Below are positions 1,563-58,862 of a DNA stretch of 64,000 nt, piece after piece (within the stretch, counting starts at the first letter, position 1; each line of letters starts with the position of its first letter). The position numbers and the translations under genes were made by a program. The stretch is from positions 37,138,001 through 37,202,000 of the forward strand of contig CM060733.1 in assembly GCA_030704615.1 (NCBI GenBank). The letters are read 5' to 3'. This DNA is from Takakia lepidozioides. Its lineage: Eukaryota > Plantae > Bryophyta. The notes under the pieces were generated by a model. It did no database searches. It was not told the origin of the DNA and was given only the letters and a program-made list of their open reading frames with translations.

Positions 1563-2250
1563 ATGTATGGAGCTACCAAGGGGTCACGTAGGTACTCTCA
1601 AGCTATGGGCACCATCGAGCTTGATGACTTCATACATGAGTTTGATAGTTGCTGTGATTTGCAGCAAATGCGCAATCCACAACTGTTTACGTCTTTTATG
1701 GCACGGAAGGAGCTAATCCAGCACCTTGAAGGGCCGCCCATGGATGACTACCATGAATTTAGATGGGGAAATGAGGTGGAGATTGAGGAGTTGTGACAAT
1801 ATTGGTCACCTGACTATGTCTCCATCACTAGAGGCACATCAGCAAGATCCACGGCAACAACGGTAGCAGCTACACCAGCGGCTTCTACAAGCAGCAGTGG
1901 AACAAGTGAGTCAGGATCAACTAGGACATCCACTGCAGCTCCTGCCGTTGCACCAACACATGTGTCTGCATTCAACCCGATTGTGGAGTTCTTCCAAGAG
2001 TTGAGAAGGAACTACTAGGGGGTGAGAACAAAGAAGTTGCGGAGCTTGCAAAAGTCCCAGCGAAAGCCTACTGAGAGTTTGAGGGAGGCTTACACTCGCA
2101 TGAGACGCTTGATAAATATAACCCAATGGGTTACGAGGAGAAGGGTGTGGGATGCAACTCTCCTACAAGTGGCCCAACCCACCGTAACAAATGTGTTTTT
2201 GCTAGCCGAGCGGATAGAGCTCAACATGGTGGAGGAGCGGGTGGTTATGG
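1563..2250 (+). pseudogene. Retrotransposon gag, N-terminal part (stops and frameshifts)
   Basis: LDDFIHEFDSCC...HLEGPPMDDYHEF and RKPTESLREAYTRMRRL resemble the gag capsid/major homology region. The frame is continuous with the zinc knuckles across the insertion. Confidence 0.75.
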
Positions 2251-2639
2251 CCTAGGGGGTGCACTCCTCATTAAATGTACCAGCCACGTGCGTGCATAGG
2301 AGGGGGTATTTTAAACCCCCCCATGTACAACATTATACATACAGAGGGGGGTTTAAAACACCTTAAATATAATTTTACAGGAGGGAGTTGTTGTCTTTTA
2401 AGGGGTAGTGTAGTGGTAAGAGTGACGATTTGGCCGCGATGCACCGCGGGATCATCTCTTTGTTTGTTTTTTTTTTTTTTTTTTTTTTTTCTCTGCGATC
2501 TTTCTCCCCTTCCCTCCCGCCGCTTTATCTTTTCCCTCTCCTCCTCTCATCTCCTCTCCACTCCTCTCTCGCGTTCGCCTTCCCTTCCGCGGGCTTTCTC
2601 TTTTCCCTCCTCTCCTCTCCCCTCCTCTCCACAAGGCAT

Positions 2640-4870
2640 GGTATTCTTCCTGATGTTTACAAGGTTTAGGGGAGAGTTTAGGGAAGCGATCCTTTTGGGT
2701 TGATGAAATGGCAAATCCTCCATGGGTCATGACACAAGGTCAAGGACAATGTGGTGAGGGCACCTTCTTCTTCAACCTATTTCAGCCTGTCTTGCCCTCT
2801 CAACAGAGTCAGCCCTGAATTTGCAGCACTGAGCAGACCTGGCATGAGTTTTTAGAAGATTGACAATGGTGGGACAACTACAATTGCAAGGTGTGTCGTT
2901 TTCTTAAGGTACGATGTGAAGATTTTTTTCCATCCTGCTATTGCGGGCTCTTGCCTCCTGTTAGTACCTGATTTGGTATTCTTCCAGATGTTTACAAGGT
3001 TCTTGGGAGAGTCAGCTTGTTCTAAGCAGGCCGTGCTTAGCTGCACCGTGGTGGTTCTCACTGACCAATCCGTCGTTACCTGACTACAGACAAGTATGCA
3101 CACACAAGAGGTCATCTTTTGATCTCAATCCAAACCAGGAAGTGGTCAGAGGTACCAATATCAGTTCTGTCGATCAACACATTGGCACACTGGGGGAACA
3201 GATTTTTGTCCATTATGATATAGTCCACAATGGAACGTTTAGGGTTTGGGATTTCTCACGAGTCCACTGCACTTGGTCACCTACAGTTGAAGTCCTTGCC
3301 CTTGGTTGTCTTCCTAGAGCGCCCCATTGAATCACCAATGTGTAAGACCGCTCTCCAGCCAGTCAAGGGATGAACTTCTTTGAGATTGAATTGATGTGGG
3401 ACTCTATTAGAAGCACTTTTGGTCATTGCAACCTTCAACGTACACATGTTATCAATGAGAGAACCCCGGACAGTGTATCAGAAAATGAATATTGTCTTCA
3501 GATTGCAGTAGCGGCACAATTGATAAAATCAGGCACTGCTGATGAAGGCACCTTCTTCAACACATTTCACCCTGTTTTCCCCTCCTATCAGAATCGGCCC
3601 TAAATTTTCATGTTGAATTATGCAAGTTAGCTGGTTGAGTGAATCTAGGATAGTCTGGAATGACTTTGACATGATACTGCCAATGTGACAACAGGATAGT
3701 ATCCAGAAACAGGTAACAAAGACGAGGAGAAGTTGTGGAATGAATATTTTTCTAACCCTAGACAATGGTGGCACAACCGAGGCAAAAAGGTGAATGCCTA
3801 TCAGATTACCAGATGTCATTCTGAACACTGCCCCTGCCCTGGTGGACATGTAGCCAAATGTGGGTGCATCGAGGATAAGGGATCAGTGTTCAACTCTATG
3901 GCTGAACGAGATGTGGTGTTGTGGAGTGCGATGCTTGCAGGGTATGCACAGCAGGGGTGCGGGATGGAGGCTCCAACCTTTGAGCAAATGATGGGGGAAG
4001 GGGTGAAGGCCGCCGATATAACGTTTGTGTAAGTTTGCAGTGCGTATGGCAGCCCTGGAAAAAGGCAAAGAGATCCCTGGTGACATCATCAAATCTGCAA
4101 TTGTACCAAAATTTGTCATCCTGAACATTGCTCCGGTGGCCATGTATGCCAAATGTGGGAGCATTGAGGATGCCAAGGGAGTGTTCAACACTTTGGCTGA
4201 ATGAGATGTGGTGTCGTGGAACGCGATGCTTGCAGGGTGTGCAGAGCAGGAGCGCGAGATGGGGCTTTGGAGACCTGAAAGCAGATGATGGGGGATGGGG
4301 TGAAGCTCGACCCCATCATGTTTGTGTGCGTTTGCAGTGCGTGTGCAAGCCTGCAGCCCTGGAAAAGGGCAAAGAGGTGCATGGTTGCATCACCAAAGCT
4401 GGAATTGTACCAGATCTGATTATTAACAATACCCTTGTGGACGTGTATGCCATTGTGGGAGCATTGAGGATGCGGAGGGAGTGTTCAACACTATGGCTGA
4501 ACAAGGTGGTGTCGTGGAGCACGATTCATCCAAGAGGTTGATTTTAAACACAAGATTACTTCTGATTCCCTGCGGATCAATAGCTACAAGAAAGTTGCAT
4601 GGGTAGATGGTCAACTGGAAACAGCAGCGGCAGGAGTGCATTTGATAGAACAAGGCGCTACTAATGAAGGTACCTTCTTCAACACATTTCAGCCCGTTTT
4701 TCTCTGTTATCAGAGTTTTTCCCTATTCTTTCCTGAATGAGCATGGATAGAGTGTGGGTCCAGATTCATCCAAGAGGGCTGGACTTCAAGCTTCAGATCA
4801 CCTTGATTCCATGTGGGGGTCAGTAGCTATAAGAAACCTGCATGGGTAGATGGTCAACTAAAGGCAGTAG
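2640..4870 (+). pseudogene. Degenerate repeats of the OSB-family PDF motif, upstream part of the PPR gene
   Basis: LWVDEMANPPWV (~2695-2730); WHEFLED*QWWDN..K (~2840-2890); LWNEYFSNPRQWWHNRGKK (3733-3789); DFKHKITSDSLRINSYKKVAWVDGQL (4540-4617); IHPRGLDFK...KPAWVDGQL (4764-4860). All match the consensus LWxxFFxNPxxWWDNRxxKxNPxxPDFKHKxTxxALWxxxxxxPxWVxxQL. Confidence 0.75.
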
Positions 4871-6839
4871 CTGCAGCGGCACAGTTGATAAAATCAGGCA
4901 CCTCAACCACGACCACAGCTTCTGAAAGAGGATCAAGAGAGGGAGTCCACAATGCCTCTTCTGGCACTTCTGGGCATGTGAAGATACTTTAAGCGACAGC
5001 CTGACAGAGGCTCTACAGACTCTAAACCAAGGAGGCATTTCAGCAGATTCAAATATGTGTCTGTCTCTTGCTTAAGTGCATCAAGATGGACGGTCTCGAA
5101 GCTGGAAAGCAGGTGCACACTCACATTATCCAAAGTGGATTCACGCCAAATGTTTTTCTACTCAACACCCTTGTCAACCTGTATGTTAAGTGCCGGCCCA
5201 TCAGGGATGCTCACCAAGTGTTCAACAGAATGCCTCAATGATCTTTGATCACGTGGAATATTATGTTGAAAGGATTTACCAAGCATAGGTGTGGTAGGAA
5301 TGTTTTGGAGACATATGAGCAAATGATGTGCGAAGCGGTGAAGCCCAACCACATCACATTTGTTTGTGTTTGCAATGCGTGTGAAAGCCTGGGAGCAAGC
5401 TGGAATTGTACCAGATGTCATCTTGAACACTGCCCTTGTGGACATGTTTGCCAAATGTGGGTGCGTTAAGGATGTGAGGGGAGTTTTCAACACTCTGGCT
5501 GAACGAGATGTGGTGTCGTGGAACGTGATGCTTGCAAGGTATGCAAAACAGGGGCACGGGATGGAGGCTTTGGAGACCTATGAGCAAATGATGGGGGAAG
5601 GGGTGAAGCCTAACCACATCACAAGGCATTTCACCAGATTCAGATATGTATGTCTGTCTCTTGCTTAAGTGCATCAAGATGGAGGTCTGGAACAGTGTTG
5701 GACTGGTATATATGTGAAGGACTAGTACATAATACTGGTATATGCACTGGTATTAGATACCAGACCAGTCTGGTATCATTTGGGAGAATACTTGGTCAGA
5801 TACCAGACCAGGCTGGTATCAGTTCTTTCATACCAGCCACAATACCCGTACTCCCCCATCATCTTCCTCATTTACTCTAGTATGTATACTGAATTAATTT
5901 ATGTGTACATATGCCTATATATTCGTACTTAATGTATATTTACTTCTTATGTATATTTTATTTGTTTTCACTTGATACTTGCTACTTGACAAATTTGTAA
6001 CTCAAGATGGCTTTGGAATGATACCAGAGTTGATATCTCATACCAGCTGGTGTTGTGGTCATGATACTCATATTCATACCAGTATCTGGAAAAAAATACA
6101 TCCACCATTATAGAGACCAGACTGGTATGAAAGTTTTGTGATACGCCTGGTACGAGGACCAGTCTGGTATGTAAAAAACTTGATACCAGTCCAACACTGG
6201 TCTGGAAGTTGGAAAACAGGTGCATACTCACATCATCCAAAGTGGATTCACGTCAAATGTTTTTCTTCTCAACACCCTTGTCAACATGTATGTTATGTGC
6301 GGGAGCATCATTGATGCTCACCAAGTGTTCAACAGAATGCCTCAACGATCTTTGATCACGTGGAATATAATGTTAGCAGGATGCAATGCGTGTGCAAGCC
6401 TGGGAGCTCTGGAAAAGGGGAAAGAGGTCCATGGTGACATTGTCAAAGCTGGAATTGTACCAGATGTCATTCTGAACACTCCTCTGGTGGACATGTATGC
6501 CAAATGTGGGTGCATTAAGGATGCGAAGGGAGTTTCCATGGCTGAACGAGATGTGGTGTCGTGGAGTGCGATGCTTGCAGGGTATGCACAGCAGGGACAT
6601 GGTATGGAGGCTTTGGAGACCTATGATCAAATGATGGGGGAAGGGGTGAAGCCCGACCACATCACGTTTGTGTACATTTGCAATGCGTGTGTAAGTCTGT
6701 CAGCTTTGGAAAAGGGCAAAGAGATCCATGGCGACATTGTTAGATCTGCAATTGTATCAAATGTCATTCTGAACAGTACCCTTGTGAACATGTATGAAGG
6801 GAGTGTTCGACGGTATGGCTGAACGAGATGTGTTGTTGT
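3805..6839 (+). pseudogene. PLS-class pentatricopeptide repeat array (frameshifted, internally duplicated)
   Basis: Repeated P/L/S motifs such as DVILNTPLVDMYAKCGCIKDA, RDVVSWSAMLAGYAQQGHGMEAL, GVKPDHITFV and ALEKGKEVHGDIVKAG, with many stops and frameshifts. Confidence 0.95.
5693..6199. mobile_element. hAT-type MITE (507 bp)
   Basis: 17-bp TIR CAGTGTTGGACTGGTAT/ATACCAGTCCAACACTG; 8-bp TSD GTCTGGAA (5685-5692, 6200-6207); internal ATACCAG repeats. Removal restores the PPR peptide DGGLEVGKQVHTHIIQSG. Confidence 0.93.
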
Positions 6840-7863
6840 CACTAGAAGCATTCGTGCCTTTTCCGAATCGACTGCATGTCCGCGACCACTCCGGGAACCA
6901 CTTGGTAGTAAACGGGACTACTGGAGAGTCGAAACAGACAATGTGGGCCCACGGGGGCATTTCAGACTGCGGACAGAAGTGGGGTCATCGACTCCGGAGT
7001 CGTAGCAGAATTCCGGGCTATTTTACGAATTGCGTAAATACATAAAATTTGAAAAAGCCAAATTTACAAGAGGTTGTAATTACTGCACATGCGACTACAA
7101 ATTTCCTTTCCTAATTCGATTAATGGAATAAAGATATTTATTCATTAAAGTGAATATGTAGTCGACTCAACGACTCCATGAACCACTGCGCATTCATTAC
7201 ACCCATGATTCGACAGCACATTTGCTGACGTGGCTTTCACAAAAAGAGGTAAACCAAATGTGGCCTTGGGGGAATAGATATTTTAATACGTGTTGCCTCC
7301 ACCTGGCAGAGACAGGGATGCAAGTGCTTCGTCGGACATGGCGGGATGTGGGAATGTGAATCCTGACACGGTAAGGCCTTCGTATACTGTGAGCGCGCGT
7401 AGTGGCTTCTCAGAAGGGTGCAACATCGAGGTCTTGGTCATTCAACATTTACAGAATGTGCTGGATGGAGACACGATGGAGCACGCATACGGGCATGCCC
7501 TTCTGGTATCAATTCCCAAGTATCCACGCAAGGTGAGGCTGCTGAATTGGGTTTTTGCCCGTCTAGTTTTCTGATAGCATGCTCGAAACGTTCTTAGTGC
7601 CATTGAGTGGCCTTGCAATAATTTGAGGTGTAACTGCTTTTCCATTTCTCAAGTTATGAAGAAGACATCTTAGAAGAAGATCGCAAAGACGTCAAGGCTA
7701 AAGGATATGCCCTTTGGTTCTGAACTACAATCATACTGGAAATATAGGTTTGTTCACAAGACAGTACGGACCACATTCCGGGACATTATCGATACTATTA
7801 ACTGTCTCGCCCTTGCGCGCTTGTAGGACTATACAAAATGGGTTCTAAGGACAGTAAGAGTCC

Positions 7864-10800
7864 TTAGCACAGCTCTCGTCTACGAGCTGCCGGCTCCAAA
7901 GAATCTTCCCCTTCACTGCCCACATCTGCAATTTGCCTTGCGGTAATTACCAACCTTGGAATGTCTTCCTCATTAAAGATAACTGCTCCTTCCAAAGAGA
8001 TTGGTTCGGCCGTATCTGGTAGATTTTGTGGTTCCCTCAGACCCTCGTGGTCGGCATTCTCCCCTAGGTCCAGATCCTGGACGTCGGCCATGACTCGTTT
8101 GGCCCGGGGGTCCTTGTGAAGAACCACCTTCCATCCCGGCGCATGGGTGTCATCTGAAAAGAAAACTTGCTCAACTTGCGATGGGAAGATGAATGGCTCT
8201 TCATCTTGTGGTAGCATTTTTCTGAAATCAGCAAGGAGGAACCCGTACTCATCCCGTTTCATGGTGGCATCTTTTACCCAAGAACAACGGAATAGAATTG
8301 GCTTCACAAGACCATAGTCTAGTTTAAGGATCTCTTTGATTACTCCTACATATTGCACAGGGCATGAAATTGGATTTCGATCTCGTGCACAGCTCCTACT
8401 CTCTTGTTCAAAAAATGATGCCACTCCGCTGTCATAAGTCACCAGGAGGCTGGTGTTGGCATCGTCCACTCTATAATGATTGCCATATGCTTTCATTGAC
8501 CGGTACAAAGTGGCAATAAGCCCTGGGGGGAATGACAGACTCACCATGCCCTCATCTGGGTCCTCGTTCTCTGATGCGTACACTACAATTGCAGATCTGA
8601 CCCACACTGTAAAGGGCTGCAGCTCCTCCATTGTTGTGGGGTACTCCACCGGGGATATGCGCCTACGACCGCCCCTCCGCCATGCTTTTGCAAATGCACT
8701 CCGTTCCGTTTTCAGGCGGACCTTCTCCGCTGCGTACTTTCTGGCAGAAACCAAATAGAAACTGCAACTTAGTCCCCCTGACCAACACCGTGTTGTACAT
8801 GCATGCCACATGCAGAGTGTGTGTCCTTTCAAGCACACTGTAGTGATGCAGCCTACTTCATAATCACTTGCAAGCAACAACCAAGATCTACGAAACACCC
8901 TCTGTAGTCGTCTGAAGCACCCTGTTAGTACACGATCCCACTCCCATAGTGACCGGAATGACTTGTGACAATATATATGTAATTCCAGCATACAAAGACC
9001 ATTAAGAATAGCACAGGAGGGATGTAAGTTGGCACCCACTGTCTCCATGGTGTCATGGTTGTTGTGTTGTTCAGCACATAATCATGTGCCACATCCCGAA
9101 GGCGCGGGCTCATGGCACGCTTTGTTCCACCACCTTCTAGGACCTCGCCTACAACTCCTTCTTCCTCGTTCTCGTCCCACACCCGTCGTTGTATTGCATC
9201 AAATGAAGACATATACTCTGTCATGAAGCCTAGGGCTTTGTCGCGGATGTAGCCCTCCGCCATACTCCCCTCTGGCCGTGCCATGTTGCGTACATACCCC
9301 TTCAGATCCTTCATGTACCTCTCCACGGGGTACATCCACCGGCTGGCTACGGGCCCACACACATGCAACTCCTCTACAAGATGCACTAGCAAGTGCGTCA
9401 TGACGTCAAAGAATGATGGAGGGAATTCTTTCTCCAGCAAACATAGGGTTATAGCCACATCCTCATGCAACGATGTAATGTCCCTCGGATCCCACACCTT
9501 CGCACAAATCTTCCTAAACACTCGACTTACACGCATTATGGCTGTTCGAGGACCTGGCGCCATCGTACCCCAAATGCACACTGGCAAAATCTGTTGCATC
9601 ATCACGTGTAGATCATGTGACTTCATCCCCGACCATTTCTTGTTTATGGCATGCTTTTGGAAAGCACCCGAGAATCCGGTTGGCACTTTCATGGCTCCCA
9701 ATGTCTTCAAAAAATCCTCTTGCTCTGATTTGGTCAGGACGTATGATGCTGCTGGCATGAGCACTTTGCCTGGTCTATTTGGATCAGGCCTTAGCCACAG
9801 ATGTGACCGTATCCCTTCAATCTCCATGTCATTTCGTACGTTTATCGTATCCTTCTCCCCAAAGATAGTCTTCAGAATGTTCTCGCAGAAGTTCTTCTCA
9901 CAATGCATGGGGTCCAGGAGGTACCGCTGCAAGAGGTTCTGAAATGCCAAATGTCCTCCCATGAGACCAAGTTCTATGGGCAAAAAAAGTAGAATATGTG
10001 ACAGAAGTTGTCCATGTTACTACATTTTGCTTTGTTGAAAAGAGAATGGCACCAAATGTTGTGACACCAGAGGAGACATTGCAATTTGCAAAGGAGAAAG
10101 AGGCGTTCATGGAGATTGGAGGGAGAGACGGAAGTAGTGCGGATCCAGCCATGGAGCACGGGGTGAAGCGCCGGACAATCCTTTGGGATTTGCCATACTG
10201 GAAGGTGCATGAATCCCCCCCCCCCCCCATTCACTCACTTTCTTTCACATTGTGCTTCCTGGAATTACCTTTACTGTCAGGAGTCCTTCCACCAACTCCT
10301 AAGTCAGTGTAACTACTATGCAGTAGATGTTGAAGTCGTACACCTCACTGTGGAGAGGATCGTGGAGTTGATTGAAGTGCCTTCCTGCCTGTCGGTAGGG
10401 GTGGTTTCTTGCAAGGTAACGTCGATGCCCCATGTATATTGTCTTCCCTAGTGGCTTTGAGTGCCGTGAATCCACATAGGGCCCACAAATGGGGCACCCT
10501 TTGTAGCCCTTCGTCTTGCAACCCGCAACAAGGCCATATGCGGGGAAATCGTGGATTGACCACATGAGTATGGCACGGAGGGTGAAACTCCGTTGCCCTA
10601 CTGGTTTCAAAATGTCGTAAGCTTCAACTCCAATCCATAGTTCCTGTAGCTCTTCAATCAATGGTTGCAAATACACATCTATGTTTGCATTTGTCACGGA
10701 CTCCTTGCCTGGAATCAAGAGAGACAACATGACAAAGAATTTCTTTGTTGTCAACCATGGTGGCAGGTTGTATGCCACCAACTGCACGGGCCATGTGGAC

Positions 10801-11870
10801 CATGTGCAACTCTTTGATCCGTATGGGTTTACTCCATCCGTAGATACAGCCAATCGCACATTGCGTGGGTCCTCGGCAAAATCGGGCCAAGTTGCATCTA
10901 TATGCTTCCATGCAAGGGAATCTGGGACATGCCTTACCAAACCATCGTTTGAGGCATTCCTGGAATGCCAAGTCATGAGCTCACTAATGGTCTTTGCATT
11001 TGTACATTCGTAATAGACGGGGGATAAGGGGAAAGTGCCTCAACACCTTGGCTGGCTGTTGTAACCTGCCCACATCATGGTATCGGGCTGCACCGCATTT
11101 GGGGCACTCCATAGCATCCTTGTACTCTCTTTTGAAAAGTACATGTCCTTTTGGACATGCATGTATTGTCACGTAGTTGAGGCCGAGCTTCCCAATCATT
11201 TGGTTGGCCATGTGACAGCTTTTTGGCATTTCATTTGGTTGTGGAAGCAAGTTCAGCCGAAGCAAAGAGAACAACTCGTCCACAAAATGGTCTGAGACAC
11301 CGTGGGTTGTGCACAGGTTCATCAACAGCATGGTGGCAGCAAGCTTTGTGGATTTGCATCCCTCGTACAGTGGCACACATGCTTCTTCTAGTGTCATGTG
11401 TGCAGAATTCAATTCTCCATCTCCACCTCCTTCCACGCCTTCCCCCACGTGAATGCCTTCATTTCCTGCGTCATCACCATCCCCAGTTGTCGCAGCGCCG
11501 TCCCCCTCTTCAGCATCGTCCATGATGTGGAATGCTTCCTACAACATTCGAGTAATCTCCACCCCTCCATCCATGCCTGGTTCATGTCCTGCGCCCATGA
11601 CATAGTCCTCGTCTGGCCTGTCTGTATGGCTCCCTCGGGGTGTGCATTGTCCAATTGTGCCCACTCCTCATCGTCTTCGTCTGCAGGTCCATCTCCAATC
11701 CACACCCGAAATGCTTCATGTCTTTTGTGGTGAAGGAGATGTGTGCGCACACCGTCCTCAGATCTACTTGTAGTGCCCAAACAAGTTCACATGGGCATGG
11801 CATCCTTGAAAGCCCAAGGGCTCGGGCACGTGCCACTTCTCTTTCCCACAACCTGTCATCTCGGGTGTTC
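7864..11870 (-). pseudogene. CACTA TnpD/Tnp2-type transposase (multi-exon, frameshifted, one segment inverted)
   Basis: IHACPKGHVLF..CPKCG..RY, VLRHFPLIPRL, WKHID..PDFAEDPRNVRL..STDGVNP, DFPAYG, DPMHCEKN, GMKSHDLH, RWMYPVER, EGSMAEGY and DEEPFIFPSQVEQVFF are hallmarks of the Transposase_21/DUF4218/DUF4216 regions. Confidence 0.95.
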
Positions 11871-13627
11871 TGTCTACAGGGGTGATTAATTGGAAGTCCT
11901 CCGCATGGGTGAGGGGAACTCATTTTTGTTGGGGAGCCTCTTCAATGCTGTTTGTGCACGCCATTGCAGGGGGCCGGATTCTCCTTTGCAGAGATTCCTC
12001 AATTTGGCTCTGCCACTCCATTTCACTACCGTCAATTCCCTCCTCCTGCAATCTCAATTTGAAAGGTTCAGTCGCACATCCTTTGGCAGAGAAGACAGTT
12101 GACATTTTATACCAACCGGTAGATTCCACAACATGATGAAAAGTTACACTCAACAGCAAACCATTTAAAAGCCATCACGATGCTTCCCATCATAACTAGA
12201 ATCTTTTCAACAAGACATTGAGAGAAATGACCAAAATCGACTCAAACAACGACATCCTGGAAAACGACCTGTCTCTACAGTTCGTGTGTGTGTGAGGAAT
12301 CGGAGGACGTACCTGGAATTTCAATTTTCACGATTGACGACGTTGTGATCTTGGGCATATGGTTGAATGTGTATGAAATGTGTGCATTGAAGTGTGAACA
12401 ACCTGACTACAAGGCCAGAACCTGCGCCACTTGTCTTAGGCCATCTCCAAATCACGTTTCGGCGGACAATCCCGTTCCGTTGCCGTGAAATTGCACCGTG
12501 GCGGGAAGGGAGTCCATTTGTGTGGCTCTATCACCATGGCGGGAAGGGGAGCATGTTAAAAATGGAGCATCGCCCTGCCACTTCACTCATTTGCTGTTTG
12601 CAGCTTCTTCCACCATCTTTCTTACTTAATTCTGATTCTTGCAATGTTGCCCTTGAGACGGCAACTGCAAGTGACCGGATCCTTTGATCGTCGCATTCAA
12701 AGACACTTACGTGTAGCAGATCGCAGACCCCAAATGCCTGGAGAGAAAGCCAGAGGGCAGTCAATGCATGCACGGTTGTTTTGCACCGGTTGGGACGGAG
12801 TGGGGTGCAGAGGAGGCGTGCTGTGCCCGAGTTCGCATGCCTAGCATCCTGCAGCCGGCGGCTTTTGCACGTTGGGCAGCAGTACCCTCTGCTGTATGAT
12901 TACCATTTGTGGTACAGACTCACCGGCCTCCCCTGTCCACTTGGGTCTTGGGACAGCGACTTATGGAGTATGTAGACAGAGTTGCATGTCGCGCAGGTAC
13001 ACCAAAATCTCCCATGTAACATAAACCCATTTCTCATTCATGCTTGCATGTGATCCACGGGATAATTTCCATGTTCTCCCAGCTGATGTGGGTTCGCAAA
13101 TTCTCGGTGTGTAGGTGTGTGTGTGAGGACCTCAACCTGGCATGGTGCGATGGGTGTCGAATGGACCCTTCTTTGCGATGGGAAAACCACTACAGTTGAG
13201 TTTGTTTTTGCTGAATCATTTGGCAGAGCACTGTGTTCACTTCTCACACATCATGCGCATTTTCTCCAAGAATGCATGTAAAGCGGAGCCATACACGACA
13301 TCATTGCAGTGTGTTTCCTTCGCCTAATTTTGAACGAAAAACAGTTAACGGATCCATGTCAGTTGTGTGAATCACTACATCTAGTTGTCTGGAGGATTGT
13401 AAGTGGTTTAGGGTTTAACGTCTCAAAGTCAAAAAGGCCATAGTGTCGGATGCACGACACGTGTTCATATTTGAAATCAACAACGGCCGGATCTTCACTA
13501 CAGATCGGGGGGGTGTGTGATCACACTCCCCTCCTTGTCTTTCTTTCCTCCTTTGCATGTCTTGGTCTTCCTCGCTCGTCTTTGTCTTGGTCATGGTCTA
13601 TGTCCTCGCTCGTCTTCATCTTTGTCA

Positions 13628-16600
13628 TGGTATGTCCACGCCTAGTAAGAAGCGCTCGACCGCCGAGGCAGCATCACCTCCTCCCACTTTTGCACATTCC
13701 AGCCCCGCGGTGCGAAGGAGCCCCTGCCTGGCTCGACTGAATCCGCAAAAGATGGCCTCGGTGCGAGAGGGAAGGCGACACGGTGGGTGGTCTTCGAGTT
13801 CAGATTCTGACACAAGCGAGTATAGCATGGGCGACGACGATGACGTGGAGGAGAGTTCGGCGGAAACTGCACCTCCATCTGCAGAGTCTCTCCAAAAGGT
13901 GCGCAAGTGAGTGCTACTAGAGAAAATGTGTAATGAAAATGAAGTTAGGCAGAAAACATCCTTGAACATGTTTTCAATTTGTGACATGGGGGAGGACATC
14001 GTGGAAAAACCGAAGGGTCTACCACTGTGTGCAGAGGGACTAATTTTAAGGTCAAGGAAATGTTGCTTTGTCACGTCATTGCACCTATGTTGGAGTACGC
14101 ATTTGCTATATGCGTTGATAACTCCAACAAGGCTAGGTCTGCAGTATCCTTCCAAGTGGGGGTGCTTAAGGAGTGGATGTCCGCATGCTCCAAAATAGCC
14201 AATGTGGCTGTTCATGGTGAGTTTGGCATCCCTTCCTTAACCGGAAGTGGTGGGAATAGCTGGTGAGATGGTGGAGTCTATTGCAACACATGTCTTTACA
14301 CCAGATATCGTAAGTTAATCGACTCTATATCTTGGAAATAGGACCGCCCAGCCAAACAGGCCAAGTCCTGCCAGATGAGACTAGACAAGACTCTCAAGGA
14401 TCTAAATGTCGACCGTCAAGTCTTGACCTTGCTGGAACCATGTGACTTAGAGACTGTAGTGTCCAAAGCCATGTGTGCTGCCACAAAATTGTGTAATTAC
14501 AAAGAAGTTAGGCATAAAACATCCATGAACCTGTTTCTAGATTGTGACATGGGGGAGGACATCCTGGATGACCTGAAGGGTCTACCCACTGTGTGCACCA
14601 GACTGAAATAGTGGATTTGGTGAGGAAGCCTACCTTTGGATAGCAAACAGAAGCTGAGAGGGATGAGAGAGTGCTATTGCCCGTTCTGTGGGCTCCACAA
14701 ACACAATATTCATTGTCTGATTCATTGCCCGGGGTGCTATCACCAGACAGACCACCGGATATCCAAGCTATCAATTGAATTGTGTCTGCACCTGTGTTTA
14801 CCAACATTGAGAGTCTTTAGGCCTTTTGGGGCTCCGTTGTTGGGCAAGCACATACAGCCAGCACATGATTGTGTGAATAGATATCCACTGGATATGTGGA
14901 AAACCCGGATGGATGTTCTGTTTCCTGATAAGTTTCATGTGGTACTGATGTGAACCCGCCCACATTCTGCTTCTTCACCAATGAATGGCCTTACATGTTA
15001 TGAGGACATTTTGTCCCTCTCCTTTTCATTTTTTGGCACTTGCGCTGCAGGGGAGTGGGTTTGAGGTCTGTTGTTTATGGTTGTGGTTGTGGGATGGTTT
15101 GTGCTTTGGTGACGTTGTATTCAGTAGGACTACAGCTGATGCACCTTGTGTGTGGGATGTTTTTGGCAGCGGAAGGGGAGTGAAGCTGCAACAAAGCACT
15201 CACAGCCACCATACAATGCCAACCAACACCAACCTTGGCACCCACCCCCTGCCGGATGGTCTCCACAACAGAGTGCATCATGGGGAGCCCCCCCTGCTTT
15301 GGGGTCGTGGCGCTGGCTTCCTGATGCTGGCACGTCACAATGGGGGCCTCCCACATCTCCATACGGCCCTCCCCCCTCCGGCACACATCAGTTACCCCCC
15401 ACAACGTATGATGGCGCTGCTCCAAAGCATGGGGGCAGGAAACGGTCATCAGAGCTGAGGAAGGAACGACGCCATGCCATGAAACAATGGGAAGGAGATA
15501 GAGAGGGAAGGGTGGCTGCAGGGCTAAAGCGCCACAAGGTGGAGGTGCATGGAAATGGAGTCATCAATGTTGGCTGCGAAGGTAAGGAACACTGGCAGCG
15601 TGATTTGCGTGGCCTGGCATTGCGTTACCTTGACTCAAGCATACAAGACATTGACCAGCAGTCCCAGAGTGCCATGTCAACAGTAATAGAGGGCATAAAT
15701 GGAATGTACGAGTACACACCTATCCCTGCCAATCGTGATTTTATAGTCAAGCAATGTGGGAAGATAATAAAAGGAGAAAGAGCAAAACTGAAAGATAAAT
15801 GGGCGAAGACTGGTGTGAGGCCAATGAACACTGAACCCGCCTATTGGGATAAGCTTGTTGCCTACTGGGAGTCCCCTCGTGGACTTGCAAAGGCCGAAGG
15901 GATGAAGCAAGCGCGTGCTTGTGTCACGAACCCCTCGCGTTGGGGCCGGGCAGGAGTTGTAGGCCAAGCAGCCCGTTTGGTAATCTCCCACACCCCCTTC
16001 TCATTGCTCTTACGTTGTGGCATGTTGTGATGGAAGAGACACCCACGAGTGGGTTTTATTCCTTGTGCATAATTAGTTGTTATTTGATATGCAGGGCAGT
16101 GCTTTGTCCATATGCTCCTGGCATTTTGTACTGACAGTGTGTGGATAGGCAAATACAGAAAAGACGCAAAGCGCGGAGCCCGTCACTGTCCGAGCTCGGG
16201 GCGGAGCAAAAGAACGCTGCGATTGGCACCCCATCAGAGTCTGTTTTGAGCCAGGTATGTTTTGAAGTCCGGTTTCCATTCATGATCTGTTGTTGTACTA
16301 AGATTTGGTGGGTATATGGGGCCCCCACGCATGGTACACAAGGGGTGTTATGCCAAACCCAGCCATCTCCGAATGCCTGAAATCCTGCACATTCGGCCTC
16401 TTCTTCTGGTTTTTAACAGTACGGGTGGGTGTTTGAATGCGTAGGGAGCGGGGAACTCAATGGCAGCCCACATCGGGGCCCTGGAGAGGCTTGCGGCTCT
16501 CTCTGCGGAGCGGGAGAGGGGAATGGAAGCACAACAGAAGAAGATAGTGGAACTCATGATGGGGCAAAAAAAGGGTGTGACGGGTGGCATTATAGAAGAC

Positions 16601-18633
16601 CCCCCTGCTGCGACCATTGTACCTGACAAAGAGGAAATAATTGTAGTGGGTAGGGATGTGACCGAGGTCCAGCCTGTTGTTGATGATATTCACAGTGGGG
16701 GGCAGGGTCCACTCGTTGAAGAGGGAGAGGTCCAGCAAGTTGGTGGGGATGACATGGACGATGGGGGGGTCATTGCTGATGATGGGGGAAAAGGGGAAGC
16801 TGTAGGGGGAGAGGGTGGTAGTTTGCCCGGTCCAGGCTGCAGGGGGACCAAAACTTTGCCCTCCGGGGTGACTGTTGTCTCCCAACCCACTGAGGTGAGA
16901 CCCCGTGACACCCCTTCAAAAGCTCTTTTCATTGAAAAGTCGAAACTAATTGTTCTAGACCTGAACGGGATCATGTGCCACTCTATTCCTAACTTTCAGC
17001 CCAACCCGAGGCGTCATTGGCCATGGGTGTTGACCACCAACAAGTATGTTTTCCCAAGGCCCCAGGTCTGCGAGTTTTTAAACCTTCTCTTCCGGTATTT
17101 CTACGTTGGGATATGGTCATGTGCTTCCAATGGGAATGTTGCAGACATCTTGAAAGTGGTGATGCAGGGGGTCAAGGGTTCTCCCCTCTTTGTGTGGTCA
17201 CAAGTAGTGTGACCCCTTGACAGAGCCACACCCCACAAAAGGGCCTGCCGTACAGAACTTACAGAAGAGACTGTCGAGGGTGTGGTCGCAATTTTTTGGA
17301 TTTAACGAATCCAACACCCTCTTAGTGGATGATTCACCACACAAGGGGAGGGGGAACTCCCCTTTGAACATGGTCCATCCATTTGTCGTTTGATGTCACT
17401 GGCAATGCCAGTGAAGGGCCCGATTCAAACTACCTTTTAGAAACACTCTGGCCCTACTGCCAAGATTTGTTTTGCTCCAAGGATGTGCGTGTCTTCACAA
17501 GCACGCGGAAGCTGACCCCGACTGACAGCTTGAATGTGGGAGAGGATGGGGTCGTTGGGGGAAGTGCTTCTGCGCCTATGCAAGTGAAACTAACCTTACT
17601 GTTTGCAACATGACATCAAAGCCAAAAGAGATGTTTGTTTTGTTCCCCCCGGATGCCCTCTCACGCAAGGCTGGCACTATGTGTTTTGCAGGGACCACAG
17701 GGAGTGGCACTGGGGTCGAATGTGAAGAAGGTGGGTCCTGCGCCAAGGACCATAGTGCTACGGCGCCAGCATTCCGGATCTGCCCCCCGGCATGAGGAGG
17801 CAGCGCCCAAGGTATGGTTGTTCCCAGCCCTTCTCCGCAAACTTACTTGGTTGGTTTCCTTTATGGATACACTTCCTGAAGTGTTGCAATGTGTATTCAT
17901 TGCAGGTGAGCAAGAGGAGTGGGCTGTCCCCGGCACCATCATCGCAGCAGGACGTGGTTCCCCAGGCATGCATTCATGGCTCCTTGCTTTGTCTGGTTTC
18001 TAGTAGGGTTATTTTTGCCAGGAAGTTGTAGTGTGCAAGGTCTGAGCAGGGTGTTTGTTAGCTTGCTCCGTGGAGGTGTGTTTATACCATTGCAGCCACC
18101 AGAGTTCATGTTATTCTTATCCGTCTGACTAAACCTCTTTTTGCTGCTGCAGTTGAAGACACGTGGGCAGCTTTCCTCAGTTGCCACCCTCAGCGACGAG
18201 CCTCACTTCAAGGTACGTTGGTACACCGTGAATTTGCTGCTGATTCAGTATCGTGGCAACCAAGATCGTTTCCATGCCCAGCTGCGCTTGACTTTCACCC
18301 TGTCATTGCTATGTTTGTTGCTGAGTGGACCCTGATGTTGGTGTCTGCAGATATCAGATCTTGTGTTTCTCCTGAACCCCAATGACAAGCGGTCAAAGAC
18401 AGCCGCCGCAAAGGCGGAAGTGGTGGGAATAGCCGGGGTTGACAAGTTCCACTGCAAGGACATTCGTTCCGGGTGGTACAAGGTGAAAGTCCACGAGATC
18501 ATGCTTCCAAGTGTTACATTGCCTTGCCCAAATGTGGACGATGCCCCCCCCCCCAGACCACACTAGCGCACGTAAAAGGCACGGTGACTCTGTGGCCAGA
18601 GAAGAGTATGAGGAAAGGTGAAAGTATCAAGTG
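13628..18633 (+). pseudogene. CACTA accessory gene (TnpA-like), multi-exon, with an embedded FCP1/NIF-like HAD domain and a C-terminal Tnp1-like domain
   Basis: 15146-15980 encodes YWDKLVAYWESPRGLAKAEGMKQAR..SRWGR (TnpA/Ptta-like). A coiled/acidic segment spans 16460-16900, the NIF-like domain 16930-17500, and the last exon 18351-18633 reads VFLLNP..AEVVG..GWYKVKVHEIMLPSVTLP..VTLWP. Exon boundaries are approximate and the 13628 start is tentative. Confidence 0.65.
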
Positions 18634-19762
18634 AGATTTCATGTTTGTAGTCCCTGTTGGGTGTGTAATGATACTCATAGAAGTGTGTATGATACTCACA
18701 TTACTAGTTTTGAACATTTGGGCCATGACAGTTTATGTGATGTCCGGCAACCATGTATGTTGGCATTTTGTCTTGCTCATACGCAGGTGTGCCGTGACGG
18801 TCTCTTATTTGAATGTAATATCACATTTTCCTGAATTGTCGTCGTGTCCGTCCACCTTCTATGTGTATGTGTGATGGTCTTTGGTCTCCCTGGACCACGT
18901 CTATTTGGTTCATTAGCGTGATGTTGTGCATGCATCGTGGTCTGTGTTCTGAGTCTCGCCCAGTATCATTGCTTCTCAATTCCCCCTGCATATGGGTGAA
19001 CCACTAAAACCACTAGAATGCATCAGAACCATACTTTCAGCTTAGAATGCAGGTCATTTGGACAACTCACACAAACCACTACAAGTGCTCGTTTGCAGTG
19101 CTTTCCTACTGTAGTACAACCAACTAGCACAGTGGCAGCGGAGTTGGTCAAAACAGTCCCGAGAGGGCACAAGCACTCTGCGTCTTTCCACTAGCAGTCG
19201 TACCCCTCACTGCCATTACATGGGGACAACGTCACGCGTCGACCCACACACTCTCCACGTGGTCCCCGTGGATTCGTCTGCCGGCAGTTGTGTGGTCGAC
19301 TTCGCCAGTCACTGTTGCCACGTGACATGCAGCACTCCAAGTTATGTGGCCGACTGCGATGTGGCGTCTTGGGTCCGTGGCCACGCGGCAGCATTGCCGC
19401 TCGTCACGGCGCCGCCACATCGGCGTCCACGTCCGCATCCACATCCGCGTCCATGTGTCACCGCGCCTCGGGTGAGTTAGTCCACTCATCCGTAGGGAGA
19501 AGTCAAAGTCAGCCCAAAAGGTCAGACACACGGGCGGCCGGCCTGGTTACGCCATGTGGTTCTTCAGTATTAATAGCATTAATTGCTGAGCAGTTGTTCG
19601 CGCGTCTGCATCCTTTACCACTCCAATCATTGGATGTCCAACCCAACTACCACGTCTGTTGTAACTAGTCGTTTGTAACTTCTAGTCGATCCCATTTTTT
19701 TGACTTTTACGACTCAAAATGAGTCATTACCCCAGTGGTAAATGACACAAATGCTTCTAGTG

Positions 19763-20109
19763 TGTGGAGTGCGATGATTGCAGGATATGCACAGCAATGG
19801 CGCGGGATGGAGGCTTTGGAGACCTATGAGCAAATGATGTGCCCGCACTTTGCATTGCATGATGTTGAGGAAGAGCTTAAAGAATCGTCTCTTTGCCACC
19901 ACAATGAGAAGCTGGCCATTGTTTTTGGGCTTATCAACACACCCTCTGGGATGTCTTTAGGGATCATCAAGAATCTTCGGATGTGTGGTGATTGCCACAC
20001 AGCCACCAAATTCATCTCAAAGATAGCTAAGCAAGAGATTGTTGTACAGGATGCAAACCGCTTTCACCACTTCCAAAATGGTGTTTGTTCTTATGGGCAG
20101 TATTGGTGA
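19763..20109 (+). pseudogene. 3' end of the PPR gene: last PPR motif joined to a truncated DYW deaminase domain
   Basis: [74 protein letters not shown]. HxE and CxxC are present; E1/E2 and the PG box are deleted; the terminal CSCxDYW is degenerate. Confidence 0.95.
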
Positions 20110-20807
20110 AATGAAATGCTTGTCATCTAATTGAATGTATTGAACTCTGTCAAGTGCGAGTCAGGTTGGACTCCAACAGTGGCAGCAAAGGCGAACGAAA
20201 TCTCTTTTTGGAGAGGAATTCTCAGCAGTAGGTTTTGAACATAATTGGACCTTGCGAAGGTTGAAACTGTAGAACAAGTTCAGAAATTGTCATAGTTGAT
20301 GAACAGAGATGCAGTGACTAGGTCTTGGTCTTCAAGAGGGTCACTCTTTGATGAAATACCCAGGACTGCATATCAGAAAATAGAAACTTTCTTCAGGCCT
20401 CTTGCACATAGGGCATTGACAATGTCCCTTTCCTCTCGGCATTTGATTATTGTTCAAAGTGAGATTCCACAACAAGTTTTATCGAGGGCAAACAATTTTT
20501 TAATTAATTAATTATATTTTATTCTATTTTTAAATGAATAAACTTGATATAATATTAAAACATACATATACATATTTGAGGGTATTTTTTTAATTATTGA
20601 AAAGGGAAATATACATACAGAAGGGGGTATTTTTTAAAAATTAAAAATTTCTATATATTTAGAGGAGGGGGTATTATAATCTTCAAAATGTATGTACAGA
20701 GGGGGTAAAAATGATCTAAGGACCCGTATACAGGGGGTTATTTTATTAGGCGGCGAACGCACGTGATACAGACATTTTATAAAGAGTGCACCCCCCAGGG
20801 GTTATGG

Positions 20808-22200
20808 TGGGGTTTGGCAATGAGACACAACGAAGTGGGGCTCCTAGCCAATAACAACCAACTCCCCAACGTGCTCAAGGCAACAAGGAGACTCAGACAA
20901 AGCCCAGAGAAGGTCATGAGAGATGATCTCAGATGCAAAGGTCTCTTCCTTCATTCTCAGGCCAGCAACAGACGAGTGTGTCATGTTGGGATTGTGGAGG
21001 ACTTCATGTCAAGAAGAATTGCCCGGAGAGAGGCAAAGGGCCGACACAGGCACAGTCTACACAATTACAGTGTGGACATTGTGGCAAGTACGGGCATGAG
21101 GAGGCCCATTGTTATGACCTGCATCCTGAGCTACGACCAGGCCAAGTTCCAAGGGAACAATGGTGGCCGAGGACGAGGCGTTGTAGTCCAGAGAGGTAGA
21201 GGAGGCAGAGGTCGTGGTGGAGGTCGTAACCAACACCAAGGAGCACAGGGTCAGGGTCAAGATCATGACCAAGGCATGTGGATAGATTTGCCCAGCTAGA
21301 GCAATGTCTTGCTACCATGGCTACTACTCATGTTGCGCAAGTTCCAAGGCCTGAGGTTCAAGCTCCACCTGCACAACCTCATGTGCCTATGGAAGACCAA
21401 ATTGGTATGGGCTTCATGTGTGGAGCCGCACTTACAGGGCCATTGTATGTACTAGACTCTGCTGCTGCTGTCACTTGAGCAGCAACGCGTGAGCCAAGAG
21501 GAGCGGATGTGGATTTTGATCCACAAAGGGGGAAAGCAAGTCGTCAGACAAAGCTTCCACAGTCTTTTACATTGGCTGAAACAGTGTCATCTACGTCGTC
21601 AATGACACCCGCTTGCCTAAGTGTGTCAGAGGTAGAGCCACGAGTGTTATTGGGGATAGATGGTGTGGCTCAGGAAATGCTAGTGGGTGGTGCTCCAAAG
21701 CAAGGTGCAGCCAGTACATTGTTGGGGGCAGCTACGGCGGTTTGCCAAGCTCCATTGTTTTTTGCAATGACCATTGCAATGCCACGGATTCGGCCAGCTG
21801 CTGTGTTTAGACTAGCAGCTAGACTTTTTGAGAGTGGTGATGCAATATCAACACTATCTGCAGGGATAACAGATAAGGTGCAGTCTATGGATGCCTTGGA
21901 TTCGAGGGTGAAGTCGGCCACAATTAAGCCATGGTAAGCGGCCGCTACACGGTTGCAGGAGTTGCCAGCTAGGCCAGCCATTGAGCGCAGCATGGTGACT
22001 CCTGAGATAGTCCTGGTGGACAATCAAGATGGAGTGTTTCAGTTGGGTGGCCCAACCGGGAGGATGTGTAGGCCACTGCGAGTCTTGCTGGACTCGAGAG
22101 CTCAACCATTGATGTTGGGGAGAGCGGCAATTGCAGGCTTGGGCCCTACAGAGGCAGATTTGGAGCCTTGCTGGCAGGGTGCTGCATACAATACCCGTAC
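20808..22200 (+). pseudogene. gag C-terminus (two CCHC zinc knuckles, RG-rich tract) and aspartic protease of the gypsy element
   Basis: CWDCGGLHVKKNC and CGHCGKYGHEEAHC; RVLLDSRAQPLMLG is a degenerate DSG protease motif. Confidence 0.85.
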
Positions 22201-22409: not shown

Positions 22410-23335
22410 TTTGTTTGCTAGACCTGTATGGAGACATGAGCACTGGGCTTGTAGGAGTGTTGCAAGCTGGGATTAAAATACGAAAGTACTTGTATGTGGA
22501 GAATGATGAGATAGCTCGGCATATTTCTATGCGCCACGTTGCCTTGCTCACACACCAGTACCTGAGTTGCTGCCTCTCTCAGCCATTCAAAGATACCAAA
22601 AGGCCATACTAGCAAACATTACCATGCTAGGGACGGAGGATTTGGACCAGCATGGTCCCATTGACTTGGTGATAGCAGGGTGGCATTACCAAGGACATTC
22701 TCCCGCAGGTCATGGTAATGGTTTGCATGATGCAAGGTCGCATCTATTTTGGGAGATGTTGCGAGTGTTGCATGACTTGCAAGTGAGGCAAGTGCAACCT
22801 CTAGCTTACATTCTGGAGAATGTTCCTCTCATGGGGGATTCTCGGGCCAAGGTTATGGCTAATATGCATCAGGTGCGGTCTTGGATTTGACAAGCTGTAT
22901 TATTGGATGCAGCTGTAGTGGGGTCACGGGCTCATAGGCCTAGGTTGTGGTGGACCAACCTAGCACCACCAGAGTTGCTCAAGAGAGCATATGATTCCAT
23001 TCAACGACCACCCGATCTCATGGTTGATGGCATTTTGGACCAAGGGAGGCAGCCACATGGGGTGCGACATGATGACCATCCACCTTTGGCGGTGGTTAAT
23101 TGAGTGGGACAGCCACGTATGGCCTTGCCTACACTTGTGAGCTTTCCCTCGTCTCATGCTTTTCGAGACAATGGTCCAGGGTTGATTTGGGACAGTGCGC
23201 TACAACAATTGATAGAGCCCAATGTGGATGAGAGAGAGCGGGCAATGGGGTTTGCCACAGGCACTACAGCTTCTGTCAGAGACATCACGTCGACAGATGT
23301 TGGGTCAAGCAATGGATCTAAATTGCTTGACATAG
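22410..23335 (+). pseudogene. DNMT3-like C5-cytosine DNA methyltransferase domain inside the retrotransposon pol region
   Basis: Motif I LDLYGDMSTG; motif II YVENDEIA; motif IV GPIDLVIAGWHYQGHS (expected GWPCQG); LFWEMLRVL; motif VI ILENV; motif VIII AHRPRLWWTNL (DNMT3 AHRARYFWGNL); motif IX ERERAMGF; motif X QMLGQAMD. Motifs are in canonical order, with several stops and frameshifts. Confidence 0.9.
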
Positions 23336-49449: not shown

Positions 49450-49880
49450 TGTGGCTTCTATTGACCAAGTTGGTGGCGGCTAAATCAGAGATGCCAAGCA
49501 ACTTCTTGCAGAAGGTGGAAGGTGCATTCGTCAAGTGTCATACATGTTAAGGGGACTGGCTCCTAATGCTTTGGTATCTAACACCAAGTAGGAAGGAACA
49601 ACATCCCTCTTCACACATCTTCCGATGGTCAAAACTACTGACCTAACTGAATGTTGACATAGCCAGTTCAATGCTAGGTGCTTTTTTGCTCCTCCACAGG
49701 CTAAAATGTAAGGACTTGGACCCAGAGAACCCAGCATCCAGTTCAATTGGCATTCTGTTAATGGAGTCTTCTGCTTCATCCAATGACCCTATGCGACCAA
49801 GGAGGTCCACAAAATGGTCCAATTGTATGAGTAACACCATAATCTCGGCTCATGGAATTCGAAGTATTAACGTATTAACA
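49450..49880 (-). pseudogene. PLS-PPR remnant (last PPR motifs / E region)
   Basis: HFVDLLGRIGSLDEAEDSINRMPIELDA matches the S2 motif before E1. A LNMY-like E2 trace lies downstream. Confidence 0.75.
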
Positions 49881-58664: not shown

Positions 58665-58862
58665 TGGTATCATTATGTTGGTATCGTTGGTCTGGTATCA
58701 GGTTTAGGACATACCAGACTGGTCCTGGTCAATGTATTTTTTTACAGATACTGGTATGAGTATGAGTATCATGACCACAATACCAGCTGGTATGAGATAT
58801 CAATTTTGGTATCATTCCAAAGCCATTTGACTTACAAGTTTATCAAATATCAAGTAGAAACA
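58665..58862 (-). mobile_element. Partial inverted copy of the hAT MITE at 5693-6199
   Basis: Reverse complement of ~5965-6170 (shared ACTGGTATGA..ATGAGTATCATGACCACAA..CCAGCTGGTATGAGATATC). TIRs are missing. Confidence 0.85.

What the first reader, a model, noticed from the sequence alone, without database searches (positions are those of the whole stretch)
2251..20799. Pack-type TIR transposon whose only cargo is a PPR-DYW RNA-editing factor gene
Seen: TIRs, a perfect 8-bp TSD and in-frame restoration of gag show the 18.5-kb block inserted as a unit. Subtracting the nested CACTA and hAT MITE leaves about 5.1 kb with no transposase, only a pyrimidine-rich leader, PDF motifs, PPR repeats, DYW and a 3' tail. 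Known: PLS-DYW proteins are organellar RNA-editing factors, and their family expansions are usually attributed to retroposition. Inference: DNA-transposon capture could be another route that multiplies and shuffles editing factors. The CC...GG termini with an 8-bp TSD do not fit hAT (CA/TA start) or typical MULE ends cleanly.
Basis: partly seen in the sequence, partly recalled or inferred. Interest (0 to 1): 0.85.

Follow-up and report, generated by a model that had tools for sequence, protein, structure and literature searches.

The report
Moss transposon carrying broken editing-factor gene
A cut-and-paste DNA transposon in the moss Takakia has no transposase gene and is instead filled with broken, reshuffled pieces of an organelle RNA-editing (PPR-DYW) gene that still keep intron borders, so the pieces were copied from genomic DNA rather than from mRNA.

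Summary
Window 2251-20799 is one TIR transposon insertion with 43-nt imperfect inverted ends, a perfect 8-bp target duplication and GGGGGT-rich subterminal regions. It sits in the gag-like part of a degenerate LTR retrotransposon.

- **Size:** removing a nested hAT MITE and a nested 12.9-kb CACTA leaves 5,108 bp with no transposase trace.
- **Cargo:** it is not an intact gene. It is a patchwork of pieces of a PDF-motif + PLS-PPR + DYW gene, with about 8-9 PLS triplet remnants in three reading frames, stops and duplicated 5' modules. The DYW domain lacks E1, E2 and the PG box. Two short pieces of a dispersed repeat are also present.
- **New here:** three splice junctions of the PDF exons sit at the same codons as in the intron-containing Diphasiastrum homologue. 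No poly(A) tract or private TSD flanks the cargo. This favours capture of genomic DNA over retroposition.
- **Organism:** very likely Takakia lepidozioides.
- **Not tested:** copy number, the autonomous partner and the superfamily, because no tool reached the rest of the genome.
- **Earlier scan notes:** the scan noted a dozen or more similar ~5-7 kb elements elsewhere in this genome. One follow-up reached the same reading.

Verdict: a real Pack-type element and a new member of a known kind. It is a dead copy.

The parts
2243..2250 (.). left copy of the 8-bp target-site duplication GGTTATGG
2251..2293 (+). left terminal inverted repeat (begins CCTAGGGGGTGCACTC)
   Evidence: (I2)
2294..2400 (.). 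left subterminal region with GGGGGT-type short repeats and a small palindrome
   Evidence: (I5)
2401..2635 (+). tRNA-box-like stretch, T24 run (2467-2490) and CT-rich tract; origin unknown, and the only homopolymer run of 8 or more in the 5.1-kb element
2636..3789 (+). degenerate, partly duplicated 5' gene region with PDF-like motif exons and introns: second half about 2650-2740; first half 2864-2890 followed by GTGTGT; putative intron 2891-2963; second half about 2964-3070; complete exon 3712-3789 bounded by CAG and GTGAAT
3790..5692 (+). PLS-type PPR repeat remnants in three frames with stops, interrupted at 4540-5010 by a third copy of the 5' module
5693..6199 (.). nested hAT-type MITE (TIR CAGTGTTGG..., TSD GTCTGGAA at 5685-5692 and 6200-6207); a related piece lies at 58726-58856
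   Evidence: (I8)
6208..6839 (+). continuation of the PPR array (longest open stretch is 6220-6822, 200 aa)
6840..19762 (-). nested 12.9-kb CACTA element (TSD TGT) inserted inside a PPR motif; transposase domains on the minus strand; 97.8% identical over 2 kb to a Takakia lepidozioides contig
   Evidence: (I7)
19766..20109 (+). end of the last PPR motif joined directly to the C-terminal 87 residues of a DYW deaminase domain; E1, E2 and PG box missing; HNE, CGDCH, CSY and QYW stand in place of HSE, CxDCH, CSC and DYW
20110..20569 (+). 3' tail with no poly(A); 20283-20463 is a reversed fragment of a dispersed repeat also at 45696-46134 and 55332-55767
20570..20756 (.). right subterminal AT-rich region with five GGGGGT-type repeats
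20757..20799 (-). right terminal inverted repeat
20800..20807 (.). right copy of the target-site duplication
1797..2250 (+). host: gag-like reading frame of a degenerate LTR retrotransposon, upstream part
20808..21196 (+). host: continuation of the same frame with two CCHC zinc knuckles (two stops present)

Best explanation
This is a non-autonomous cut-and-paste DNA transposon of the Pack type, most likely in Takakia lepidozioides. Shown: 43-nt imperfect TIRs, GGGGGT-rich subterminal repeats, an exact 8-bp target duplication, insertion into the gag-like frame of an old LTR retrotransposon, and no transposase. The 5.1-kb interior is a mosaic of pieces of a PDF-motif + PLS-PPR + DYW gene. These pieces were copied from genomic DNA, because exon-intron borders of the PDF exons are retained. 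The copy is dead as an editing factor. It was later hit by a hAT MITE and a CACTA element. Inferred: it was moved in trans by a transposase that recognises the TIR and GGGGGT motifs. The gene pieces were probably picked up and reshuffled by template switching during repair of excision gaps, as proposed for Pack-MULEs. The ~5-kb form may have spread as a family. The superfamily is open: the 8-bp TSD and short TIRs with subterminal repeats look hAT-like, but the CC...GG termini do not.
For: TIR, TSD and the uniqueness of that configuration. Subterminal motif enrichment. The host frame continues into the frame with CCHC knuckles, and RNase H and integrase lie downstream. Nested elements have their own TSDs. 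The composite is 5,108 bp. No transposase domain in the non-PPR parts. PPR and DYW Pfam hits. Frame changes and stops along the array. The DYW domain lacks E1, E2 and the PG box. The closest full-length relatives are Diphasiastrum PDF-PPR proteins. In that gene, introns split each PDF motif after ...WWDNRYIK, and the window has ...WWDNYNCK|GTGTGT and ...WWHNRGKK|GTGAAT at the same codon, plus a CAG acceptor before the 3712 exon. There is no A-run after the DYW stop and no direct repeat bracketing the cargo. The organism follows from a 99% protein and 97.8% DNA match of the nested CACTA to run SRR15431198, which is T. lepidozioides.
Against: No second copy, no autonomous partner and no empty site could be examined, so mobility as a family is inferred from one insertion plus unchecked scan notes. 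The termini begin CC rather than the YARNG of hAT elements, and the TSD does not fit the weak hAT target consensus nTnnnnAn (my own knowledge), so the superfamily is unassigned. Pfam does not recognise the interrupted host frame as gag. The parental Takakia gene was not available, so intron retention is argued by homology with a lycophyte gene that is only 50% identical at protein level. The T24 and CT-rich stretch at 2467-2635 is unexplained.
Confidence: 0.8

Rival explanations
1. A processed PPR-DYW retrocopy landed inside a pre-existing non-autonomous TIR element, so the transposon did not capture the gene.
For: PPR families are usually said to grow by retroposition. A 2026 survey reports this for Takakia. 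A T24 run lies near the left end.
Against: The T-run is upstream of the + strand cargo, on the wrong side and strand for its poly(A). There is no A-run after the DYW stop and no TSD around the cargo. Three splice junctions and a ~73-nt intron-like spacer are retained. The cargo is a multi-piece mosaic rather than one mRNA copy.
Confidence: 0.06
2. The element carried an intact, expressed PDF-PPR-DYW gene when it was mobile, and sister copies still do. The family would then spread working editing factors, and this copy is simply a decayed one.
For: The cargo spans the gene from the 5' PDF exons to the DYW stop codon and a 3' tail, in gene order. Scan notes mention elements with 'genes' or pairs of genes.
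Against: Several junctions look structural rather than like later decay. A PDF exon plus 15 nt of intron is fused to mid-PPR at 3789-3805. A PPR motif is fused to mid-DYW without E1, E2 or the PG box. The 5' modules are triplicated. The one earlier follow-up also found a broken patchwork.
Confidence: 0.1
3. The inverted ends and 8-bp repeat are a chance configuration, or two separate small elements bracket a resident PPR pseudogene (a composite).
For: Only one copy was seen, and TIR identity is modest beyond the first 28 nt.
Against: This configuration occurs only here and at the MITE in 64 kb, and almost never in shuffles. No internal TIR copies exist, even allowing 3 mismatches. The interrupted host frame resumes exactly after one TSD copy. 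The same short motif is enriched at both ends.
Confidence: 0.03

Closest known systems
Pack-MULEs and other Pack-TYPE elements (rice, maize, Arabidopsis)
   Same: A non-autonomous TIR element with a TSD and no transposase. The interior is made of host gene fragments, including intron-bearing genomic pieces, rearranged and mostly non-functional.
   Different: The TSD is 8 bp and the TIRs are short (about 28-43 nt), rather than a 9-11 bp TSD with TIRs of 100 bp or more. The termini are CC...GG. The cargo comes from a single gene type, PDF-PPR-DYW. No paper in the searched library reports that cargo in such elements.
hAT non-autonomous elements (Ds, nDart, hAT MITEs)
   Same: An 8-bp TSD, short TIRs and subterminal short repeats. 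A textbook hAT MITE is nested in the same element for comparison.
   Different: The terminus is CCTAG rather than YARNG. The TSD GGTTATGG does not fit nTnnnnAn, whereas the MITE's GTCTGGAA does (my own knowledge of the consensus). No hAT transposase is linked to these ends.
PPR retrogenes (the usual model of PPR family growth; PMC13386178)
   Same: A dispersed extra copy of PPR-DYW sequence lying among LTR retrotransposons.
   Different: It keeps splice junctions, has no poly(A), and is bounded by TIRs and a TSD.
Diphasiastrum complanatum PDF-PPR genes (KAJ7517632.1, KAJ7568884.1)
   Same: Closest full-length relatives of the cargo. They share the N-terminal PDF-like motifs split by introns at the same codon and the PLS triplet type.
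   Different: About 50% protein identity. They are ordinary intact host genes with no TIRs of this kind in the 10-kb flanks.

Membership tests
Pack-type non-autonomous TIR transposon | terminal inverted repeats flanked by a target-site duplication | tested here: met
Pack-type non-autonomous TIR transposon | no transposase coding capacity | tested here: met
   Pfam on all stop-to-stop pieces of the non-PPR parts gave nothing; the rest is PPR and DYW
Pack-type non-autonomous TIR transposon | interior derived from non-transposon host gene(s) | tested here: met
   PPR, DYW and PDF-exon homology with Diphasiastrum genes
Pack-type non-autonomous TIR transposon | further copies and/or an autonomous element sharing the TIRs | not testable with these tools
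hAT superfamily | 8-bp TSD | tested here: met
hAT superfamily | TIR starting YARNG | tested here: not met
   the termini read CCTAG and CCTGG; shifting the boundary by 2 nt destroys the TSD
hAT superfamily | mobilised by a hAT (BED / Dimer_Tnp_hAT) transposase | not testable with these tools
   no partner could be fetched
Mutator-like (Pack-MULE) | 9-11 bp TSD and long (100 bp or more) TIRs | tested here: not met
   the TSD is exactly 8 bp, and similarity between the ends fades after about 43 nt
PLS-DYW RNA-editing factor (functional gene) | uninterrupted ORF with a PLS array, E1, E2 and a full DYW domain | tested here: not met
   frames 1/2/3 with stops; E1, E2 and the PG box are absent, and CSC and DYW are altered
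PLS-DYW RNA-editing factor (functional gene) | DYW deaminase signature HxE...CxxCH | tested here: met
   HNE and CGDCH are present in 19735-20109, Pfam DYW_deaminase 1e-37
Processed retrogene | intronless, with a 3' poly(A) and its own TSD | tested here: not met

The most novel reading that the evidence does not exclude
In Takakia, one or more families of Pack-type DNA transposons have repeatedly captured, reshuffled and scattered intron-bearing PDF-PPR-DYW gene segments. A measurable share of the ~2,000 PPR loci would then lie between such TIRs. DNA transposition, and not only retroposition, would have fed the expansion and module shuffling of RNA-editing factors in this editing-rich lineage.
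Probability: 0.3. Interest if true: 0.75.

Novelty: new member of a known kind. Interest (0 to 1): 0.5.

Why it matters
Takakia has about 2,016 PPR genes and very heavy organelle RNA editing. The only genome-wide study found (PMC13386178) attributes this growth to dispersed duplication by retroposition. A TIR element whose cargo keeps splice junctions shows that at least some dispersed PPR-DYW sequence moved as DNA inside a cut-and-paste transposon. If such elements are numerous, PPR counts and 'retrogene' tallies in early land plants include transposon cargo. Transposon-driven shuffling of PLS modules and DYW ends then becomes a testable source of new editing specificities. This single copy is dead and proves none of that. 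Gene-fragment capture by Pack elements is well known in itself.

Tried and rejected
- **Reads:** I also did not pass the run id learned elsewhere to read laying. So there is no read-depth, empty-site or expression test.
- **Other copies:** window self-BLAST and TIR pattern searches found none in 64 kb.
- **Protein searches:** the DYW ORF and the 200-aa PPR ORF gave no hit above 73% and 52% identity. Neither this locus nor sister copies are in that collection within the length limits.
- **Metagenome scan:** an exact 28-nt degenerate TIR pattern found nothing in JGI metagenome contigs.
- **Findings index:** searches by sequence and by relatives were blank. A word search for an autonomous partner was also blank.
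- **RNA and Pfam:** ARAGORN and Rfam found nothing credible in the leader. Pfam has no model for the PDF-like motif. Pfam did not call gag or a zf-RVT domain in the dispersed repeat, so my guess that the repeat is LINE-derived is dropped.
- **Diphasiastrum locus:** no TIRs of this type and no shared TE families with the window, so the window is not from that species.
- **Host retrotransposon:** Frame continuity was read from the two flanks separately.
Full report
**1. Observation**

The block 2251-20799 is bounded by inverted repeats of 43 nt (77% complementary; the first 16 nt match 15/16, the first 28 match 24/28). The octamer GGTTATGG abuts both ends, at 2243-2250 and 20800-20807.

I scanned the whole window for a perfect 8-bp direct repeat abutting a 16-nt inverted repeat with up to 3 mismatches. 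Only this element and the small nested MITE qualify. Twenty block-wise shuffles produced two single hits. The hexamer GGGGGT (either strand) occurs 31 times in the window, and 9 of these lie in the 380 bp at the two ends. This is the pattern expected for subterminal transposase-binding repeats.

**2. Host site**

The upstream frame (77 open codons ending at 2249) has one spare base at 2250. Continuing at 20808 enters the frame beginning at 20810, which carries two CCHC-type knuckles. Further downstream, Pfam finds RT_RNaseH, rve and a C-5 DNA methylase domain.

The target is therefore the gag-like region of a degenerate LTR retrotransposon with gypsy domain order. The frame has stops, and Pfam does not call gag itself. 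I read the flanks separately and built no joined sequence.

**3. Nested elements**

- A hAT MITE lies at 5693-6199. Its TIR begins CAGTGTTGG and its TSD is GTCTGGAA.
- A CACTA lies at 6840-19762 with TSD TGT. Transposase_21, DUF4218 and DUF4216 are on the minus strand.
- The CACTA sits inside a PPR motif, and the motif resumes after it.
- Removing both elements, with one TSD copy each, leaves 5,108 bp.

**4. What the 5.1 kb contains**

Pfam on every stop-to-stop piece of the non-PPR parts found no transposase domain.

*PPR array.* The region 3790-6839 plus 19766-19836 holds about 8-9 PLS triplet remnants. They run through frames 1, 2 and 3 with internal stops and deletions. The longest open stretch is 200 aa (6220-6822).

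*DYW domain.* The last PPR motif is fused directly to the C-terminal 87 residues of a DYW domain (Pfam 1e-37). E1, E2 and the PG box are missing. HSE reads HNE, CSC reads CSY and DYW reads QYW.

*Leader.* The leader (2636-3789) and a stretch at 4540-5010 contain three partial copies of a 5' gene module.

*Repeat fragments.* Fragments of a dispersed repeat occur at 3455-3498 and 20283-20463. The same repeat is at 45.7 kb, at 55.3 kb and inside the CACTA.

The cargo is therefore a dead mosaic, not a gene.

**5. Origin of the cargo**

An exhaustive profile-free search with the 200-aa PPR stretch ranks Diphasiastrum complanatum proteins first, at about 50% identity. These proteins carry two N-terminal motifs of the OSB 'PDF' type (…W.EFFSDP.QWWDNR…PDFKHK…LWI…NPPWV; the name is from my own knowledge, and Pfam has no model).

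In the Diphasiastrum gene (L001) each motif is split by an intron. The exon ends …QWWDNRYIK and is followed by GTGTGG. The window shows the same border twice at the homologous codon:

- …QWWDNYNCK followed by GTGTGT at 2890/2891. About 73 nt later comes a second-half exon (…PDVYKV…).
- …QWWHNRGKK followed by GTGAAT at 3789/3790. This exon is also preceded by a CAG acceptor at the position where the Diphasiastrum exon starts.

After 15 nt of that second intron the sequence jumps into the middle of a PPR motif.

The only homopolymer run of 8 or more in the 5.1 kb is a T24 run upstream of the cargo. No A-run follows the DYW stop, and no direct repeat brackets the cargo.

Together this argues that the pieces were copied from genomic DNA and joined by illegitimate events, as in Pack-MULEs. 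It argues against a processed retrocopy.

**6. Organism**

A CACTA ORF matches a contig of run SRR15431198 at 99% protein and 97.8% DNA identity over 2 kb. That run is Takakia lepidozioides from British Columbia. The scan's window count for this genome (5,084 windows of 64 kb) fits a ~325-Mb genome.

**7. Known work**

Full-text searches found no report of PPR-DYW cargo in TIR or Pack elements. A 2026 survey gives Takakia 2,016 PPR genes. It attributes their expansion to dispersed duplication linked to retroposition and LTR flanks (PMC13386178).

**8. What could not be tested**

I could not reach the rest of the genome. Protein collections hold nothing close. A TIR pattern scan of metagenome contigs was blank. 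Copy number, the autonomous partner, the empty site and expression therefore remain open.

The scan's own notes list a dozen or more TIR, Pack, CACTA or Helitron-like elements of about 4.7-7.1 kb with PPR-DYW cargo elsewhere in this genome. One follow-up on a 5.6-kb element reached the same reading. These are leads, not evidence. The sizes near 5.0 kb do match the 5,108 bp found here.

**9. Classification**

The anatomy is Pack-type. The superfamily is unassigned.

- The 8-bp TSD, short TIRs and subterminal repeats resemble hAT.
- The termini read CCTAG/CCTGG rather than YARNG, and shifting the boundary by two bases destroys the TSD.
- The TSD does not fit the weak hAT target consensus, whereas the nested MITE's TSD does.
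- Mutator-like features (9-11 bp TSD, long TIRs) are not met.

**10. Verdict**

This is a real, well-delimited, dead Pack-type element with genomic PDF-PPR-DYW cargo. It is a new member of a known kind. It becomes interesting if the family proves numerous.

Noticed in passing
window 22510-22887 (+): The host LTR retrotransposon has a C-5 cytosine DNA methylase domain (Pfam PF00145, E 2e-8) between the gag-like region and RNase H/integrase.
   Followed up: partly
L001 11471-12225 versus window 2864-2890 and 3712-3789: The PDF-like motif + PLS-PPR architecture, with an intron splitting each PDF motif at the same codon, is shared between a moss transposon cargo and Diphasiastrum (lycophyte) genes. 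This gene type and its intron positions therefore look ancient.
   Followed up: partly
window 49733-49970 (-): An isolated PPR E1/E2-like fragment (44-55% identity to the Diphasiastrum protein's C-terminus) with no obvious TIRs around it.
   Followed up: partly
window 45696-46134, 55332-55767, 20283-20463, 3455-3498, 14700-14742: A dispersed repeat of unknown class with a short Cys-rich ORF and no Pfam hit. Fragments sit in both the leader and the tail of the Pack element and inside the CACTA.
   Followed up: partly
window 2401-2490: A tRNA-A-box-like stretch followed by TTTGTTTG and a T24 run, just inside the left subterminal region. ARAGORN and Rfam call nothing, so its origin is unexplained.
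   Followed up: partly
window 6840-19762 and L002: The nested CACTA is 97.8% identical over 2 kb to a contig from a Canadian T. lepidozioides sample and keeps long transposase ORFs. The family may have been active recently.
   Followed up: partly
window 5976-6107 and 58726-58856: A second, partial copy (90%) of the hAT MITE family lies elsewhere in the window.
   Followed up: no
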